Assembly: GCF_006345805.1 (NCBI RefSeq)
Contig: NC_043020.1
Coordinates: forward strand, 13,268,001 to 13,332,000
Reading direction: 5' to 3'
DNA: 64,000 nt
Origin: Octopus sinensis
Taxonomy: Eukaryota
Positions within the stretch are counted from its first letter, which is position 1. Every line of letters begins with the position of its first letter. The notes beneath the pieces are model-generated. The model saw nothing but the letters and a program-made list of their open reading frames with translations. It was not told where the DNA came from and did not search any database. Below, one piece after another: positions 5,085-59,720 of this stretch. A program made the translations under genes and the position numbers.

Positions 5085-5457
5085 TTAACCCTTTAGTGTT
5101 CGCATTATTCTACCAAAATTAATCCTTTTTTATCCACATTGTTTTGAACTAATCCTGCATTATCTTGTAGCTATGAGATTTTGATGAGGCAGCTGTTTAT
5201 TTTTCAAACGATATTGTAGGGTTGGTGTGAGAGACCAGATCTGGCCAGTTTGAACATAAAACAGGCAGAATACTTTTGGCCGGATATGGCCGGTTTAAAT
5301 GCATTATCTTGTAACTATGAGAATTTGATGAGGCAGCTGTTAATTTTTCAAACGATATTGTAGGGCTGGTGTGAGAGACCAGATCTGGCCAGTTTGAACA
5401 TAAAACAGGCGGAATACTTTTGGCCGGATATGGCCAGTTTAAATGCTTAAGGGTTAA
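5085..5457. mobile_element. piggyBac-type MITE family 1 with internal 144-bp tandem duplication
   Basis: TTAA|CCCTTT...AGGG|TTAA ends; 5157-5300 repeated at 5301-5444. Confidence 0.8.
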
Positions 5458-8180: not shown

Positions 8181-8383
8181 TACTCTTTTACTCGTTTCAG
8201 TCATTTGACTGCAGCCATGCTGGAGCACCGCCTTTAATCGAGCAACTCGACCCCGGGACTTATTCTTTGTAAGCCCAGTACTTATTCTATCGGTCTCTTT
8301 TGCCGAACCGCTAAGTTACGGGGACGCAAACACACCAGCATCGGTTGTCAAGCAATGCTAGGGGGACAAACACAGACACACAA

Positions 8384-8414
<31 letters not shown>

Positions 8415-8815
8415 CATATATACGACAGGCTTCTTTCAGTTTCCGTCTACCAAATCTACTCACAAGGGGCTATAGCAGAAGACACTTGCCCAAGATGCCA
8501 CGCAGTGGGACTGAACCCGGAACCATGAGGTTGGTAAGCAAGCTACTTACCACACAGCCACTCCTGCACCTTATATATATATATATATATATAGTAAGCC
8601 TACTCTTAATTCTATAGATATACGACAGGCTTCTTTCAGTTTCCATCTACCAAATCCACTCACAAGGGGCTATAGCAGAAGACACTTGCCCAAGATGCCA
8701 CGCAGTGGGACTGAACCCGGAACCATGTGGTTGGTAAGCAAGCTACTTACCACACAGCCACTCCTGCGCCTTATATATATATATATATAGTAAGCCTACT
8801 CTTAATTCTATAGAT
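8181..8815 (-). mobile_element. SINE-A with 200-bp tandem duplication of head plus flank
   Basis: 8421-8620 repeated at 8621-8815; both copies share the same internal deletion. Confidence 0.85.
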
Positions 8816-9384: not shown

Positions 9385-10265
9385 TATTCTTTTAATTGTT
9401 TCAGGCATTTTTGACTGCAGCCATGCTGGAGCACCCCCTTGAAGGATTTTATTCGAACCATAAAATTATTAACCATCTTACAAACAATAACTCTGAGCAC
9501 CTTTTCAAACTCCACCCGTCTAACACCCGTGGACATATTTACAAAGTCAGAAAACAGCACAGCTCCCATGACTTTAGGAAACATTTTTTCATGCTGAGAT
9601 TTGCTGAAGCATGGAACAAACTGCTGGCATCAGTTGTTAGTTGTCGGAGCACTGCATCCTTCAAAACTTCCATGCTTTCTGAGATTCGCCATGCTGGAGC
9701 ACCTCCTTGAAGGATTTTATTCGAACCATAAAATTAGTAACCATTTTACAAACAATAACTCTGAGCACCTTTTCAAACTCCACCCGTCTAACACCCGTGG
9801 ACATGTTTACAAAGTCAGAAAACAGCACAGCTCCCATGACTTTAGGAAACATTTTTTCACACTGAGAGTTGCTGAAGCACGGAACAAACTGCCCGCATCA
9901 GTTGTTAGTTGTCGGAGCTCTGCATCCTTCAAAACTTCCATGCTTTCTGAGATTCGCCAACACTACACCTGATTTTCTCCCCTCCATACACACACACAAG
10001 CATGTATCTGACTCGTACATTGTTCGCTTTCCAGACATTTGTACATTACTGCATATGCTTTATACACACTTTCTGACAAGTTGTGGTGCACCTGAGCACT
10101 GTATACAATAATCTCATTATTATTAAATCGACCCCAGGACTTATTTTTTAAAGCCTGGTACATATTCTATTGGTGTCTTTTGCTGAACTGCTAAGTTACA
10201 GATTTATACATACCAACACTGGTTGTCAAGCAGTGATGGGTGACAAACACAGACCCAAAGACAGA
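9385..10265 (-). mobile_element. SINE-A tail split by a CR1 insertion
   Basis: gccatgctggagcacc...attcgaac [insert] aaatcgaccccaggacttat resumes at ~10125. Confidence 0.75.
9459..10124 (+). mobile_element. CR1-clade LINE 3' fragment (ORF2 C-terminus and 3' UTR), partly duplicated
   Basis: Translation SNTRGHVYKVRK...FRKHFFTLRVAEA(W/R)NKLPASVV...FK is the typical CR1 ORF2 C-terminal motif; ends in (ATT)n. Confidence 0.8.
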
Positions 10266-22479: not shown

Positions 22480-23023
22480 CATGGAATTGTGGTGGAAGGT
22501 TATAAATCATTTTAAAACATGGTACCACAGGGTACCATATTTTTGTTGAAACGCACTGCTTTTGTTTCAAGTAATTTTGAGAATCATGAAGAATTTAGTC
22601 AAAATAAATTTGTCATTATTAAGTTTGTGTTTCAAACAGAATTTAACATGGAATTGTGATGGAAGGTTATTAATCATTTTTAATCATGGTACCATAGGGT
22701 ACCATATTTCTATTAAAATACACTGCTTTTGTTTCAAGTAATTTTGAGAATCATGAAGAATTTAGTCAAAATAAATTTGTCATTATTAAGTTTGTGTTTC
22801 AAACAGAACTTAACGTGGAATTGTGGTGGAAGGTTATAAATCATTTTAAAACATGGTACCACAGGGTACCATATTTCTGTTGAAATACACTGCTTTTGTT
22901 TCAAGTAATTTTGAGAATCATGAAGAATTAAGTCAAAATAAACTTGTCATTATTAAGTTCGTCTTTCAAACAGAAATTAACGTTGAATTATGATGGAAGG
23001 TTATTAATCATTTTAAAACATGG
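22480..23023. repeat. ~167-bp tandem repeat, about 3.2 copies, MITE-related
   Basis: Unit starts at 22480, 22647, 22813 and 22981. Confidence 0.9.
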
Positions 23024-32052: not shown

Positions 32053-32470
32053 AGGTGCAGGCATGGCTGTGTGGTAAGAAGCTTGCTTCCCGATTGCATG
32101 GTTCCAGGTTCAGCCCCACTGCATGGCACCTTAGGTTAGGGTCTTCTACTGTAGCCTTGCGCTAACCAAAGCCTTGTGAGTGGATTTGGTAGACAGAAAC
32201 TAGAAAAAGCCTGTTGTGTGTGTGTGTGTGTGTGTATATATACACACACACTCTTTTACTTGTTTCAGTCATTTGACTGCAGCCATGCTGGAGCACCGCC
32301 TTTAGTCGAGCAAATCGACCCCAGGACTTATTCTTTGTAAGCCTAGTACTTATTCTATCGGCCTTTTTTGTCGAACTGCTAAGTTACAGGGATGTAAACA
32401 CACTAGCATCGGTTGTCAAGCGATATTGGGGAGAAAAACACAGACACACAAACATATACTCATGCACACA

Positions 32471-32512
<42 letters not shown>

Positions 32513-32665
32513 CGACGGGCTTCTTTCAGTTTCCGTCTACTAAATCCAGTCACAAGGCTTTGGTCGGCCCGAGGCTACAGTAGAAGACACTTACCCAAGT
32601 TGCCACGCAGTGGGACTGAACCCAGAACCATGTGGTTGGTAAGTAAGCTACTTACCACACAGCCA
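32053..32665. mobile_element. SINE-A head (+) followed by full SINE-A (-)
   Basis: + head 32053-32220; - copy ~32250-32665. Confidence 0.8.
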
Positions 32666-33054
32666 CTCCTATGCCCAGTCTACTTCTCTAAACTAGGGGG
32701 TCGGGGCTGTCAAGGACTTGGTGTTAGAAAGCCTGAGCAATGACATTGCCTCAGTCTTGAAGATAAAACAGAGAAACTTTCGGTCGCCATCAGTGATTTT
32801 GCCTTTGAGTCATAGGTCAACAGTAAGTCCGACTACCAGAAGCCCTTCTTGTTGAGGTTTTTAATCTACAGTTTGAAATCTGAGGTAGTCAGAGTTTACG
32901 AAATGGCTTGACTGAGGACTCAATCCAATTTCGCTAAAGACTTGATTTGCTGGAAAGTTATTTATAATTTATTGCTTTTATAAAATGATTTTGCTTAAAT
33001 GTTCATTGAAATAATATTCATGTCCGATTTCTGTTTACATTTTTATTAAATAAT

Positions 33055-33175
33055 GTCTTTTTTTTCTTTTTCGTTCTAGGTAAGTGGAAAATTTTTTATT
33101 TTCAACAATGTGCTCAAAGAGAGAAAAAAATAGTGGAAGAAACTTTTGTGTATTTCTTGGTCAAGTAGCGTGAGT
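33055..33175 (+). promoter_or_regulatory. Candidate recursive splice site (AG|GTAAGT) with 90-nt cryptic exon
   Basis: Long polypyrimidine tract, ctag at 33076-33079, gtaagt at 33080-33085, downstream gtgagt at 33170. Confidence 0.55.
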
Positions 33176-33824
33176 TTTTGGGTTTGTTTCTCGAATCTCT
33201 TTTAATGAACCTATTCAGTGCTATGCCCTTCACTGGATTCAACATATTCATCTTGTATTGGTGTTTTTTGGGGTTTTTTTTTTGCTATTGTTCCTCTTGG
33301 TTTAAACGAAAAAATTTTTCTCTATTGTCTGTGTATGAAATAATGTGTGTGTGCATGTATGTGCATTATATAGGTGTGTTTATGTATCTATGTGTATGTG
33401 TGTGTATTTGTGTATGTTGCTATTGTAATCTTGTCTTCTTAAACCAGAGTAGGAGAATTTTTCATAAAATACATAAAAAAAACAGAAAGAAAAAATGCAA
33501 ATTTAATTGTCCTTCCCATCTTAATTCCATTTTGATGTAAGACCTTGTTGAAACTTTATTTACTTCAGCTTGAAAAAGAAATTAACCATTCTATTCCAGG
33601 AGTGAAGATATTAACTCCAGTTTTTAAGGAATTTTTTATTTTTTATGAACTCATCAGGTTGTGTGAGAAAAATCTATTGTTGAAAAGTTATGTTCTCTCT
33701 TAGATTCTGCAACAGTAAGTCTGAAGCTATTGTCTAGAGTATGGAATGGTTAAAAGCAACTGAACGATTTTCTAATGGAACAGAAAATCTCATAAATCTC
33801 TTAGTAGAATTTTTTAAAGAATTT

Positions 33825-35349: not shown

Positions 35350-35750
35350 ATGCACAGGAGTGGCTGTGTGGTAAGTAGCTTGTTTACCAACCACATGGTT
35401 CCGGGTTCAGTTCCACTGCGTGGCACCTTGGGCAAGTGTCTTCTACTATAGCCTCGGGCCAACCAAAGCCTTGTAAGTGGATTTGGTAAACGGAAACTGA
35501 AAGAAGCTCGCTGTATATATGTATGTGTGTGTGTATGCGTGTATGTTTGTGTGTCTGTGTTTGTCCCCCTAGCATTGCTTGACAACTGATGCTGGTGTGT
35601 TTATGTCCCTGTCACTTAGCCGTTCGGCAAAAGAGACCGATAGAATAAGTAGGCTTACAAAGAATAAGTCCCGGGGTTGAGTTGCTCGATTAAAGGCGGT
35701 GCTCCAGCATGGCCACAGTCAAATGACTGAAACAAGTAAAAGAGAGAAAA
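35350..35750 (+). mobile_element. SINE-A full length
   Basis: Complete structure. Confidence 0.85.
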
Positions 35751-36487
35751 AGAGAGAGAGAGAGAGAGACATACATATAAACAAACAAATAAATAAACAA
35801 AATTCATTATCATCATCTGAACCTTGTTGACCCAAGTTCTAGTACTCAGAGAGAGAGAGCTAGTTATTTGGTTTCCATGGGGTATAAGTTACCGAGTTCA
35901 CATCTTCCCTGAACATGGTGCCAGTTCATTTCAGCATTACCTGTTTACAAGCTGAGTGAACTGGAGCAATGCAAAATGAAGTCTTTTACTCAAGAACTCA
36001 ATGCACCACCCAGACCAGGAACTGAAATCACAATCTTCCAATCACAAGTGCAACACCCTAACATCTAGGCCACATGCTTTGACCATACATATACATAGTG
36101 GAGAACAGTTCACACGTGTGCTGAGGCTGACCAAAGGATTTTATTTTTAGATATATCTGGGGTACTTATATGTACTCATGATTTTTGCTTCGGCTTTTTT
36201 CCATGGGCACATGTAAGTATCTTATTTATATCCTTTTGTATTTTCTACTGAAGAGGAAAAAAATCTATTATGAGATTAATTCCGAAATTGATTCAATACA
36301 GAAATAACGAACTTTTTAAAAAAATTCTATCGGCCGGCTTTCCTCGTTTTCAGCTCTTCGTGTTTTTCCTGTAGCGAGTAAATAATATGTGGAAATTGAC
36401 GATTTAAAAGTCTGTTATCAGCATATTGGCATAGAAATAATTTTCTTTAGCCCTTATTTATAAGTTGTTCATAAATATGTATATATA

Positions 36488-40270: not shown

Positions 40271-40429
40271 TCAGATCAGGTCACTTGCTATGCAAGTACA
40301 TCTCCATAAAAATATAGTCGTACACGAATATACATGTAGACATACAAATATGTATAAGTACACACACACACACATACACATGCAAACACAAACACACTAC
40401 ACATACATATTTTAGTGCCGGTGACACAT

Positions 40430-41410
40430 AAAAGGCATCCATGCCGGTGAGACGCAAGAGGCACTTGTGCCAGTGACATGTAAGGTGCATCCGTGCCAGT
40501 GACATGCAAAAGGAAACCATGCTGGTGACACGCAAATGGCACTTGTGCTGGAGACACGCAAATGGCACTTGTGCTGGAGACACACAAATGGCACCTGTGC
40601 TGGTGACACGCAAATGGCACTTGTGCTGGTGACACGCAAATGGCACTTGTGCTGGTGACACGCAAATGGCACTTGTGCTGGTGACACGCAAATGGCACTT
40701 GTGCTGGTGACACGCAAATGGCACTTGTGCTGGTGACACGCAAATGGCACTTGTGCTGGTGACACGCAAATGGCACTTGTGCTGGTGACACGCAAATGGC
40801 ACTTGTGCTGGTGGAACGCAAATGGCACCTGTGCTGGTGGCACGCAAATGGCACTTGTGCTGGTGACACGCAAATGGCACCTGTGCTGGTGGCACGCAAA
40901 TGGCACCTGTGCTGGTGGCACGCAAATGGCACCTGTGCTGGTGGCACGCAAATGGCACTTGTGCTGGTGGCACGCAAATGGCACTTGTGCTGGTGACACG
41001 CAAATGGCACCTGTGTTGGTGACACGCAAATGGCACCTGTGCTGGTAACACGTAAATGGCACTTGTGTTGCTGACATGCAAAAGGCATTTATGCTGGTGA
41101 CACACAAAAAGCAATCATGCCGGTGACACACTATGGGCACCCATGCTGGTGACACATGAAGAGCACCCTTGCCAGTGACATGTAAGAGGTGCACATGCTT
41201 GTGACACATAAAAGGCACTTTTGCCAGTGATGCACAATATGCACCCATGTTGGTGATAACATGAAAGACACCCAGTACAATCTGTGGAGTAGTTTGTGTT
41301 ATGAAGGGCATCCGGCCATAGAAACCAAGCCTGTTGCAGCTCTCTGGTTTACCAGATCCAGCCAAACTGCCTTACCATTGAAAAATGGACGCTAAATGAT
41401 GATGATGATG
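40430..41410 (+). mobile_element. Degenerate RTE 3' UTR containing a 26-bp minisatellite
   Basis: Unit gtgctggtgacacgcaaatggcactt, about 21 copies at 40519-41075, followed by an RTE-type tail and (GAT)n. Confidence 0.85.
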
Positions 41411-45143: not shown

Positions 45144-45560
45144 TACTCTTTACTCTTTTACTCTCTTACTTGTTTCAGTCATTTGACTGCGGCCATGCTG
45201 GAGCACCGCCTTTAATCGAGCAACTCGACCCCAGGACTTATTCTTTTGTAAGCCCAGTACTTATTCTATCGGTCTCTTTTGCCGAACCGCTAGTAACGGG
45301 GACTAAACACACCAGCATCGTTGTCAAGCAATGCTAGGGGGACAAACACAGACACACAAACACACACACGCATACATATATATATATATATATATACGAC
45401 GGGCTTCTTTCAGTTTCCGTCTTCCAAATCCACTCACAAGGCTTTGGTCGGCCCGAGGCTATAGTAGAAGACACTTGCCCAAAGTGTCACGTAGTGGGAC
45501 TGAACCCGGAACCATGTGGTTGGTAAACAAGCGACTTACCTCACAGCCACTCCTGCGCCT
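45144..45560 (-). mobile_element. SINE-A full length
   Basis: Complete structure. Confidence 0.85.
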
Positions 45561-45613
45561 ATGTCGACTTGCATGTCGATTTGCATGTTGACTTGCATGT
45601 CGACTTGCATGTT
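45561..45613. repeat. 12-bp tandem repeat atgtcgacttgc, about 4 copies
   Basis: Direct reading. Confidence 0.9.
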
Positions 45614-55305: not shown

Positions 55306-55813
55306 ATATTTACTGAGTTTGTCTTCTGTGGCACTGTTATGGACCATTATTCAATTGACCCATCACTGGTGCTGCCATAATAAATTTTGGTAATAAATCT
55401 TTCATTCAATAAAATTCTGTAAGTAAATATTTTCTGCTACAAGAGAAATACTATTTATAAATAAGGGAAATGGTTCTATGTTTTGTATTTGTTCTTGATG
55501 TATCAATAATCTATTTGACCTCTTAACAAAATATTTACTTGATAAAATATCGAATGATTTAGCTGAATAAATACCATCTTCTTTTCATCTCTCTTTTCAT
55601 TTCCTTCTCTTTCTTGTCGTAATGTTTACATCTGTGATATAACTGTTTTTTCTTCTAATCAAAATACGCATTAATTAAATTATGTTTTTACCTAGATATT
55701 GATTGATTGATTTTTTTCTTTCCCATATAGTTTTCTAATTACATATTAATTAGATTAAATGTACATTAATTATATGTTTATGGCAAAACAAAATCTAGGT
55801 TATGAAATTTTTC

Positions 55814-57241
55814 AAGTCGTAATCAGTAGGAAGGCAGACAAATCACACACGCCTTCAGGTAGATGGCCCTGCTCGATCTGTAGAAAAGGTGTAGGTAGAA
55901 ACTCTATAAGATGCACCAAGTGTAAGCTATGGACACATAAGAGGTGCAGCAATGTCAAAGGAAGGCTAACTAGGAAGATGGTTTTTGTATGTGGCAGATG
56001 CTCAGGAACAATAAACACTGAAAATGCTCTGAGACCAACTTCCGTCACTTTCCAGGGAGAGAAAACTAGAAATAGTTGATAGTTTCCGTTACCTAGGTGA
56101 CCAAGTCAGCAGCGGGGGCGGGTGTGCTGAAAGTGTAACTGCTAGAGTAAGAATAGCTTGGGCAAAGTTCAGAGAGCTCTTACCCCTGCTGGTGACAAAA
56201 GGCCTCTCGCACAGAGTGAAAGGCAGACTGTATGGCGTGTGTACGAACAGCCATGCTACATGGCAGTGAAACATGGGCCGTGACTGCTGAGGATATGCGT
56301 AAGCTCGCAAGAAATGAAGCCAGTATGCTCCGATGGATGTGTAATGTCAGTGTTCATAATCGACAGAGTGTAAGTACCTTGAGAGAAAAGCTGGACCTAA
56401 GAAGCATCAGTTGTGGTGTGCAAGAGAGACGTTTGCGCTGGTATGGTCATGTGGCGAGAATGGATGAAAGATAGTTGTGTGAAAAAGTGCACACCCTAGC
56501 GGTTGAGGGAACCTGTGGAAGAGGCAGACCCAGGAAAACTGGGACGAGGTGGTGAAGCACGACCTTCGAAATTTAGGTCTCACTGAGGAAATGACTAGAG
56601 ACCGAGTCCTATGGAAGTGTGCTGTGCGCGCGAGAAGACCCGGCAGGACAAGTGAGTCCATAACCCGTGGCCTTCTACTTGGGATGGAGCCAGCCTACGT
56701 ATGCATACCTTCCTTCTTGGGACACAAAACTCTACATGTGAAGACCTGTTGAGGCAAGTGAGGATCAGAAATGAAAATCGATCAATGGAAATTGCAGATG
56801 TGTTACCAGTGCGGTGGCATGTCGAAACTCTACTTGTGAAGACCCGTTGAGGCAAGTGAGGATCAGAATGGAAATCGATCAATGGAAATTGCAGATGTGT
56901 TACCAGTGCCGGTGGGATGATAAGAGAACCTTCCGTTTCGCGGACGTTGCCAGCACGCCCCGTTTCGTGTCCGTTGCCTTCCTCGCCTGGCCCTTGTGCC
57001 GGTGGCACATAAAAAGCACCATCCGTTCGTGGCCGTTTGCCAGCTCTGTCTGGCACCTGTGCGGGTGGCACGTAAAAAGCACCCACTACACTCACGGAGT
57101 GGTTGGCGTTAGGAAGGGCATCCAGCCGTAGAAACACTGCCAGATTTGACTGGGCCTGATGAAGCCTTCTGGCTTCACAGACCCCAGTAGAACCGTCCAA
57201 CCCATGCTAGCATGGAAAACGGACGCTAAACGATGATGATG
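55814..57241 (+). mobile_element. 5'-truncated RTE-clade LINE: frameshifted ORF2 C-terminus with PHD finger, plus full 3' UTR
   Basis: Peptides FRYLGD, LLPLL, LHGSETW, RRLRWYGHVARM and GRGRPRKT are RTE-typical; stop at 56653-56655; (GAT)n tail; several frameshifts. Confidence 0.9.
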
Positions 57242-59131: not shown

Positions 59132-59231
59132 NNNNNNNNNNNNNNNNNNNNNNNNNNNNNNNNNNNNNNNNNNNNNNNNNNNNNNNNNNNNNNNNNNNNN
59201 NNNNNNNNNNNNNNNNNNNNNNNNNNNNNNN
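59132..59231. other. Assembly gap (100 N)
   Basis: Direct reading. Confidence 1.
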
Positions 59232-59640
59232 ACACACACATGCAAACACACTCACACAAATGCAAGCAAGCCACCACACACAACACATGCAAACACTCAG
59301 CACCCTCACACACAGCCACACACACACACATGCAAACACACACACATACACACACACACATCCAAGCACACTCACCACACACACACACACACACATGCAA
59401 CCACACACACACATGCAATCACTCATTGCACACATGCAAGCACACTCACACACATGCAAATACACTCACATACACATGCAAACACACATGCACGCACACA
59501 CGCATGCACATGCACACACACACACTCATTGACATGTACACACATGGGCACAGGCACATGCACACACACATACATACACACACACCTACAAACACACATA
59601 CACCAATACACACACAAACACATACACACAAGCACACATT

Positions 59641-59680
<40 letters not shown>

Positions 59681-59720
59681 CAAATACACAATCACAGAGA
59701 CACACACACACACACACACC
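59232..59720. repeat. (CA)n/(CACATG)n field
   Basis: Direct reading. Confidence 0.9.

What the first reader, a model, noticed from the sequence alone, without database searches (positions are those of the whole stretch)
33055..33175. Textbook recursive-splice site with a stop-filled 90-nt cryptic exon
Seen: a ~25-nt polypyrimidine tract ending ctag, followed directly by a perfect donor GTAAGT (33080), in unique sequence. A second donor GTGAGT lies 90 nt downstream (33170). The enclosed 33080-33169 has stops in all three frames. Known: Drosophila ratchet points and vertebrate recursive sites have this AG|GT junction, defined by a downstream cryptic exon that often contains premature stops. Inference: a recursive site in a very long cephalopod intron; I am not aware of such sites being characterised in this lineage. 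It could instead be an ordinary non-coding exon that begins with GTAAGT.
Basis: partly seen in the sequence, partly recalled or inferred. Interest (0 to 1): 0.7.

Follow-up and report, generated by a model that had tools for sequence, protein, structure and literature searches.

The report
Candidate recursive splice site, unverified
A near-perfect "splice acceptor joined to splice donor" motif sits in repeat-rich, exon-free Octopus DNA; it could let a very long intron be removed in steps, but nothing available here shows that it is transcribed, used or conserved.

Summary
The letters are as described. A 22-nt pyrimidine tract (one G) ends in TAG, followed directly by GTAAGT at 33080. GTGAGT lies at 33170, and the 90 nt between them have stops in all three frames.

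The acceptor|donor junction is far above chance. It scores 23.1 bits, against 13.2 (+) and 15.3 (-) for the next best sites in the window. The expected number is about 0.0001-0.002 per window, or roughly 10-90 per 2.7-Gb genome.

The other two features add nothing. 219 donors on the + strand score as well as the downstream one. A stop in every frame is the usual state of 90 nt of AT-rich DNA.

The lineage is Octopus, shown by shared SINE and LINE families and the best named protein hits. No coding exon was detectable in the 64 kb. The + strand shows T>A skew, excess T-runs and more acceptor-like sites. These hints fit a + sense intron but do not prove one.

No orthologous DNA or RNA data could be reached, so use and conservation remain untested.

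Estimates: recursive site about 0.4, unused chance motif about 0.35, ordinary exon about 0.2. If real, it is a new member of a known kind in an unstudied lineage.

The parts
32958..33077 (+). AG-free zone upstream of the acceptor. The previous AG is at 32956-32957, a gap of 122 nt.
   Evidence: Only 0.5% of AG-to-AG gaps in the window are this long. This is compatible with a protected 3' splice site, but the stretch is also simply T-rich and G-poor (14 G in 130 nt).
33034..33046 (+). Candidate branch points: TTTAC with A at 33037 (42 nt before the junction) and TTTAT with A at 33045 (34 nt before it).
   Evidence: YTNAY matches. Such matches are common in AT-rich DNA, so this is inference only.
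33056..33077 (+). Polypyrimidine tract of 22 nt with one G at 33073.
   Evidence: 19 of the 20 bases before the AG are pyrimidines. Only 4 of 7170 AG dinucleotides in the window (both strands) reach that level.
33078..33079 (+). Acceptor AG, in the context cTAG.
   Evidence: The acceptor part scores 14.1 bits. Six sites on the + strand and none on the - strand score as high.
33080..33085 (+). Donor GTAAGT directly after the acceptor. After the first splicing step it would be rebuilt as [upstream exon end]|GTAAGT.
   Evidence: The rebuilt 9-mer scores 8.6-12.9 bits, depending on the last three bases of the unknown upstream exon.
33080..33169 (+). Putative 90-nt cryptic exon (recursive-splice exon) that would be used for exon definition and then skipped.
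   Evidence: It has stops in all three frames and no protein homolog. Its existence is inferred from the model only.
33116..33142 (+). Purine-rich stretch AAAGAGAGAAAAAAATAGTGGAAGAAA inside the putative exon, resembling GAA-type splicing enhancers.
   Evidence: sequence. The enhancer reading rests on general knowledge and was not tested.
33170..33175 (+). Downstream donor, AGC|GTGAGT.
   Evidence: It scores 5.4 bits, weaker than the rebuilt donor. 219 sites on the + strand are as good, so its presence is not significant.

Best explanation
The site is a recursive splice site (a "ratchet point") on the + strand, inside a long intron of an unidentified Octopus gene.

Proposed mechanism:
1. The spliceosome recognises the strong acceptor (pyrimidine tract 33056-33077, AG at 33078-33079, branch point near 33037-33045). 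The downstream donor at 33170 helps by exon definition.
2. The upstream exon is ligated to base 33080, which rebuilds a near-consensus donor, NNN|GTAAGT.
3. That rebuilt donor (8.6-12.9 bits) outcompetes the weaker AGC|GTGAGT donor (5.4 bits). In a second step the rest of the intron is removed from 33080 onward.
4. The 90-nt exon never reaches the mRNA. If it did, its stop codons would mark the transcript for decay.

Shown here: the sequence anatomy, its rarity, the relative donor strengths and the Octopus origin.
Inferred: that the + strand is transcribed, that the window is intronic, and every splicing step.
For: - The juxtaposed motif scores 23.1 of a possible 27.0 bits, 8-10 bits above every other site in the window.
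- The expected count is about 0.0001 (independent bases) to 0.002 (empirical) per window, or about 10-90 per 2.7-Gb genome (genome size is from my own knowledge).
- It matches the published consensus. Recursive sites in mouse are enriched for AGGTAAGT and a pyrimidine tract (PMC8797253). Fly ratchet points are acceptor|donor pairs with a short cryptic exon (PMC8605326).
- The rebuilt donor is stronger than the downstream donor. In flies this is the condition for exon skipping.
- There is a 122-nt AG-free zone with branch-point candidates.
- Context fits a long + sense intron. More than 60 window-unique ORFs of 55 aa or more have no protein homolog.
- T>A skew is +4.35% (z = 5.6) and positive in all eight 8-kb blocks of unique DNA. 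T8 runs number 72 against 28 A8 runs.
- Strong acceptor-like sites number 6 on + and 0 on -.
- T>A is the general rule on the coding strand of introns (PMC5786239).
Against: - There is no evidence of transcription, junction reads, lariats or conservation. None could be obtained.
- The host gene and its strand are unknown. An exon-free, 58% repetitive 64-kb window is equally what an intergenic desert looks like.
- The T>A skew is not calibrated for Octopus. The 21 kb of O. vulgaris DNA fetched gave no usable calibration.
- The downstream donor and the stop codons are at chance level.
- Tens of equally good motifs are expected by chance in a genome of this size.
- It is not known whether cephalopods use recursive splicing, or how often.
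Confidence: 0.4

Rival explanations
1. It is a chance motif with no function. A T-rich run that happens to end in TAG lies next to a chance GTAAGT, in DNA that is intergenic, untranscribed or antisense to its host gene. It is never seen by the spliceosome.
For: - About 10-90 equally good motifs are expected by chance per genome, and the first-stage scan selects for exactly such outliers.
- T-runs are abundant on this strand (72 T8 runs), and six acceptor parts as strong as this one occur on it.
- The window has no detectable exon and is 58% repeats, as expected for a gene desert.
- The corroborating features, the second donor and the stop codons, are at chance level.
Against: - The per-window probability is only about 1e-4 to 2e-3.
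- The consistent T>A skew and the acceptor asymmetry favour + strand transcription.
- If the strand is transcribed within an intron, signals this close to consensus would be hard for the spliceosome to ignore (inference).
Confidence: 0.35
2. It is an ordinary exon that happens to begin with GTAAGT. This could be a non-coding exon (5' UTR or lncRNA) or an alternative "poison" cassette exon covering 33080-33169, or ending at another donor. It would be included in some mature transcripts.
For: - A strong acceptor is followed by usable donors at +90 (5.4 bits) and +294 (TAG|GTGTGT, 7.6 bits).
- The interior contains a purine-rich, enhancer-like stretch.
- In mouse brain, 46 of 84 AGGT sites supported by junction reads turned out to be unannotated exons, against 19 recursive sites (PMC8797253).
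- Stops in every frame fit a non-coding or poison exon.
Against: - With a consensus GTAAGT at its first base, the rebuilt donor should outcompete the weaker downstream donor, so the exon would be skipped (the donor-competition rule).
- It has no protein homolog and no coding frame.
- There is no transcript evidence.
Confidence: 0.2
3. The pyrimidine tract is the antisense A-rich tail of an unrecognised retroposon on the - strand, and the motif is a by-product of that insertion, as with exons that arise from antisense Alu elements in primates.
For: - The - strand reads GAACGAAAAAGAAAAAAAAGA at 33056-33076.
- The window is full of SINE and LINE copies, with one ending at about 32692-32750, just upstream.
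Against: - 32750-33330 has no second copy in this repeat-dense window or in 21 kb of O. vulgaris DNA, even with 7-nt seeds.
- On the - strand the AATAAA lies after the A-run, not before it.
- This explanation concerns origin only and does not exclude use as a splice site.
Confidence: 0.05

Closest known systems
Drosophila intronic ratchet points (Ubx, kuz, Bx; more than 500 sites)
   Same: - A juxtaposed acceptor and donor with a long pyrimidine tract and AG|GTAAGT.
- A short downstream cryptic exon with a weaker donor and no coding frame.
- Expected location deep in a long intron (PMC8605326; PMC6110457).
   Different: - The cryptic exon would be 90 nt, against about 50 nt in flies.
- The acceptor is TAG rather than the commoner CAG.
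- Fly sites are ultraconserved and supported by junction reads, lariats and saw-tooth coverage. None of these has been shown here.
- The lineage is a cephalopod.
Vertebrate recursive sites in long, brain-expressed genes (for example Lsamp and Ank3 in mouse)
   Same: - AGGTAAGT complementary to U1 snRNA, with an enriched pyrimidine tract.
- Recognition by exon definition through a recursive-splice exon.
- Introns over 51 kb in genes over 294 kb (PMC8797253). The genome size is similar to that of Octopus.
   Different: - Vertebrate sites are few (19-20 in mouse brain) and deeply conserved.
- Here the host gene, the intron length and conservation are all unknown.
Poison or cryptic cassette exons and unannotated exons that start with GT
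   Same: An acceptor, a short stop-containing segment and a donor. In mouse these outnumber true recursive sites among AGGT sites supported by junction reads.
   Different: A consensus GTAAGT at the first exon base predicts skipping by donor competition. Inclusion in mRNA has not been tested.

Membership tests
Recursive splice site / ratchet point | [quoted passage not shown] | tested here: met
   ttttttctttttcgttctag|GTAAGT scores 23.1 of 27.0 bits and ranks first among 128,000 positions.
Recursive splice site / ratchet point | Location inside a long intron, on the sense strand of a transcribed gene | tested here: inconclusive
   - No coding exon was detectable in 64 kb.
- T>A skew of +4.35% in all eight blocks, 72 T8 against 28 A8 runs, and 6 against 0 strong acceptor-like sites all favour + as the sense strand.
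- The same picture fits intergenic DNA, and the skew is not calibrated for Octopus.
Recursive splice site / ratchet point | A downstream donor that defines a short cryptic exon and is weaker than the rebuilt donor | tested here: met
   AGC|GTGAGT at +90 scores 5.4 bits, against 8.6-12.9 bits for the rebuilt donor. This is not above chance: 219 equally good donors lie on the strand.
Recursive splice site / ratchet point | A cryptic exon that is non-coding, out of frame or carries stop codons | tested here: met
   There are stops in all three frames. This is uninformative, because about 70% of random 90-mers of this composition show the same. The length of 90 nt is a multiple of three.
Recursive splice site / ratchet point | Splicing intermediates: reads joining the upstream exon to the site, lariats, and saw-tooth coverage in nascent RNA | not testable with these tools
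   No RNA-seq data are accessible.
Recursive splice site / ratchet point | Evolutionary conservation of the core motif above that of the flanks | not testable with these tools
   No orthologous DNA could be reached.
- ORFs next to the site are absent from the protein and contig collections.
- An exact-pattern scan of metagenome contigs found nothing.
Ordinary or poison cassette exon | Presence of the segment in mature transcripts | not testable with these tools
   No transcript data are available. No protein matches the region.
Structured non-coding RNA | A match to a known RNA family, or a fold more stable than shuffled sequence | tested here: not met
   - Rfam gave 0 hits at gathering score.
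- Sub-threshold hits fall almost entirely on the adjacent AT-rich and microsatellite repeats; the one overlapping the site (RUF21, E = 0.6) is a chance-level match.
- The fold of 33020-33200 has a z-score of +0.76.

The most novel reading that the evidence does not exclude
Cephalopods, with genomes of mammalian size and very long introns in neural genes, use fly-style zero-nucleotide recursive splicing at hard-wired consensus sites. This site would be one of many. That would put the mechanism in a third major bilaterian lineage (Lophotrochozoa) and suggest it is ancestral to bilaterians rather than evolved twice.
Probability: 0.35. Interest if true: 0.5.

Novelty: new member of a known kind. 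Interest (0 to 1): 0.3.

Why it matters
Recursive splicing has been characterised in insects and vertebrates. No paper in the searchable library links it to cephalopods.

Octopus combines very long introns with a large nervous system, which is the setting where the mechanism matters in flies and mammals. A validated site would extend the mechanism to lophotrochozoans. It would also give a concrete locus for asking whether long-intron removal in cephalopods follows the fly pattern (many hard-wired sites) or the vertebrate pattern (few sites).

As it stands, this is one strong motif match. Its value is as a pointer to a cheap genome-wide test, not as a discovery.

Tried and rejected
1. Reaching orthologous or transcript contigs through ORFs next to the site.
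- The ORF at 33169-33537 has no homolog among 5.8 billion proteins.
- Exact look-ups of four window ORFs found nothing on record.

2. Finding a host-gene exon.
- A 4607-aa concatenation of more than 60 window-unique ORFs of 55 aa or more gave no hit at E<=1e-5.
- Exons hidden in ORFs under 55 aa, or inside repeats, remain untested.

3. An exact 27-mer scan of metagenome contigs gave 0 matches. This says little, because those collections are not expected to hold Octopus DNA.

4. Calibrating the T>A skew on Octopus genes. The only reachable Octopus locus (L001, 21 kb) was too small and gave no clear signal.

5. A structured-RNA or miRNA reading was rejected.

6. A coding-exon reading of 33080-33169 was rejected. 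Stops are present in all frames, and Pfam finds nothing in the adjacent ORF.

7. SINE orientation bias as a strand indicator was uninformative: 9 copies on + and 12 on -.

Full report
**Observation.**
The + strand at 33056-33085 reads tcttttttttctttttcgttctag|GTAAGT.
- The pyrimidine tract is 22 nt with one G. 19 of the 20 bases before the AG are pyrimidines.
- GTGAGT follows at 33170.
- The 90 nt in between contain a stop in each frame.
- 32686-33324 has no second copy in a window that is 58% internally repeated.

The small caveats are these: the tract is 22 nt rather than about 25; one stop is the TAA inside GTAAGT; and another stop is the very last codon.

**Is it more than chance?**
I scored every position on both strands with a generic metazoan acceptor-plus-donor weight matrix. 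The frequencies come from general knowledge and are not Octopus-specific.
- The site scores 23.1 of a possible 27.0 bits. The runners-up score 13.2 (+ strand, 23135) and 15.3 (- strand, 51331).
- With independent bases, the probability of reaching 23.1 bits is 1.5-2e-9 per position, about 1e-4 per 64-kb strand.
- Real DNA clusters pyrimidines, so I also multiplied observed frequencies. Six + strand positions have an acceptor part this good, and GTAAGT occurs 24 times per 64,000 positions. That gives about 0.002 per window. A cruder count gave 0.0013.
- A 20-Mb order-3 Markov simulation produced no site at 21 bits or above.

Scaled to a genome of about 2.7 Gb (size from my own knowledge), chance gives roughly 10-90 such sites. 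The junction is therefore a real outlier locally, but it is not unique in a genome.

The two supporting features do not survive testing.
- The downstream donor AGC|GTGAGT scores 5.4 bits. 219 positions on the + strand score as well, about one per 290 nt, and a better one (TAG|GTGTGT, 7.6 bits) lies at +294.
- Stops in all three frames are the default for 90 nt of 37% G+C DNA.

**Surroundings.**
- The window is Octopus DNA. A degraded LINE at about 55759-56781 (PHD finger plus reverse-transcriptase tail) has its best named relatives in O. vulgaris (78% identity) and O. bimaculoides.
- A 21-kb O. vulgaris locus shares the window's SINE and LINE families in 260 alignments, including 90% identity over 970 bp.
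- A SINE of about 410 bp occurs about 21 times, 9 on + and 12 on -. One copy ends just upstream of the site.
- No coding exon was found. More than 60 window-unique ORFs of 55 aa or more, searched together, have no homolog, and neither does the ORF next to the site.
- Rfam finds nothing at gathering score, and sub-threshold hits fall almost entirely on the adjacent AT-rich and microsatellite repeats; the one that overlaps the site (RUF21, E = 0.6) is a chance-level match.
- The local RNA fold is no more stable than shuffled sequence, z = +0.76.

**Strand hints.**
- In window-unique DNA, T exceeds A by 4.35% (z = 5.6), and the sign is positive in all eight 8-kb blocks.
- T8 runs outnumber A8 runs 72 to 28.
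- Acceptor-like sites as strong as the one here number 6 on + and 0 on -.
- T>A on the coding strand of introns is described as general in eukaryotes (PMC5786239).

These hints favour + as the sense strand of a long transcription unit. I could not calibrate them on Octopus genes, and the three measures are not independent of one another.

**Mechanism proposed.**
If the + strand is intronic RNA, the sequence has what published recursive sites have.
- A strong acceptor with a 122-nt AG-free zone and branch-point candidates 34 and 42 nt before the junction.
- A donor that is rebuilt as NNN|GTAAGT after the first ligation, scoring 8.6-12.9 bits.
- A weaker donor downstream (5.4 bits) to support exon definition.

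In flies, when the rebuilt donor is the stronger one the cryptic exon is skipped, and weakening it forces inclusion (PMC8605326). The prediction here is zero-nucleotide recursion, with the 90-nt segment seen only in intermediates. Only the anatomy and the relative strengths are shown. Every splicing step is inferred.

**Weighing the readings.**
The odds depend on how many true high-scoring sites cephalopods have, set against about 10-90 chance sites.
- Fly-like usage (more than 500 sites) would make a real site the better bet.
- Mouse-like usage (about 20 sites) would make chance the better bet.
- Nothing is published for cephalopods.
- In mouse, AGGT sites with junction reads are more often unannotated exons than recursive sites, 46 against 19. 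The ordinary-exon rival is therefore real, although a consensus GTAAGT at the first base argues against stable inclusion.

My estimates are: recursive site 0.4, unused chance motif 0.35, ordinary or poison exon 0.2, retroposon by-product 0.05.

**Comparison and novelty.**
The site meets the sequence-level criteria of the recursive-site family. The criteria that actually define membership could not be tested: an intronic sense location, splicing intermediates and conservation. If real, it is a new member of a known kind in a lineage where the mechanism has not been described. It would be neither a new mechanism nor a new variant.

**Verdict.**
This is a good candidate resting on a single strong motif. 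Interest is modest at 0.3. The most useful follow-up is the genome-wide count of such motifs on the sense and antisense strands of long Octopus introns.

Noticed in passing
window, about 21 copies, e.g. 32250-32692, 8181-8580, 35352-35758, 45153-45561: A SINE-like repeat of about 410 bp with an AT or TG microsatellite tail. Its reverse strand holds a tRNA B-box-like GGTTCCGGGTTCAGTCCC. There are 9 copies on + and 12 on -. The family is shared with O. vulgaris at 72-88% identity. It produces the recurring spurious ORF ...RLPNPLTRLWSARGYSRRHLPKMPRSGTEPGTMWLVSKLLTTQPLL.
   Followed up: partly
window, 22 sites, e.g. + strand 15961, 57836; - strand 35741, 49835: A repeat-borne motif (ttttacttgtttcag|TCATTTGA) resembling a good splice acceptor (10.7-13.0 bits) recurs 11 times on each strand, mostly at the edges of the SINE copies. 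Scattered through introns, it could seed new exons.
   Followed up: no
window 55759-56781 (+): A degraded LINE fragment. It has a 106-aa ORF with a PHD finger (Pfam E = 5.8e-6), followed by frame-shifted pieces of a reverse-transcriptase tail. It is 90% identical over 970 bp to an O. vulgaris copy annotated as a hypothetical protein. Relatives carry RVT_1 plus PHD and also occur in Hydractinia, oyster and amphioxus.
   Followed up: partly
window 40415-41155: A minisatellite with a 26-bp unit (78-bp higher order), about 28 copies at 87-92% identity. It creates mechanical ORFs of up to 317 aa on the - strand that are not genes.
   Followed up: no
window 51331 (- strand): The second-best juxtaposed acceptor|donor motif in the window: ctcctgttactttgaaacag|GTGAGT, 15.3 bits. 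It is much weaker than the site at 33080 and lies on the opposite strand.
   Followed up: no
whole window, unique fraction: A uniform strand asymmetry. T>A is +3 to +6% in every 8-kb block, T8 runs number 72 against 28 A8 runs, and strong acceptor-like sites number 6 on + and 0 on -. C slightly exceeds G in 6 of 8 blocks. This is the pattern reported for the coding strand of invertebrate introns, but it is uncalibrated for Octopus.
   Followed up: partly
window 59132-59231: A run of 100 N, an assembly gap, lies immediately upstream of a CA/TG microsatellite region (TRF 59275-59719), so the local sequence there is incomplete.
   Followed up: no
window 9420-9959; 22480-23023; 8418-8815; 5156-5446: Several tandem duplications with long units (268 bp x2, 167 bp x3.3, 200 bp x2, 144 bp x2) at 92-96% identity, which suggests recent local duplication.
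   Followed up: no
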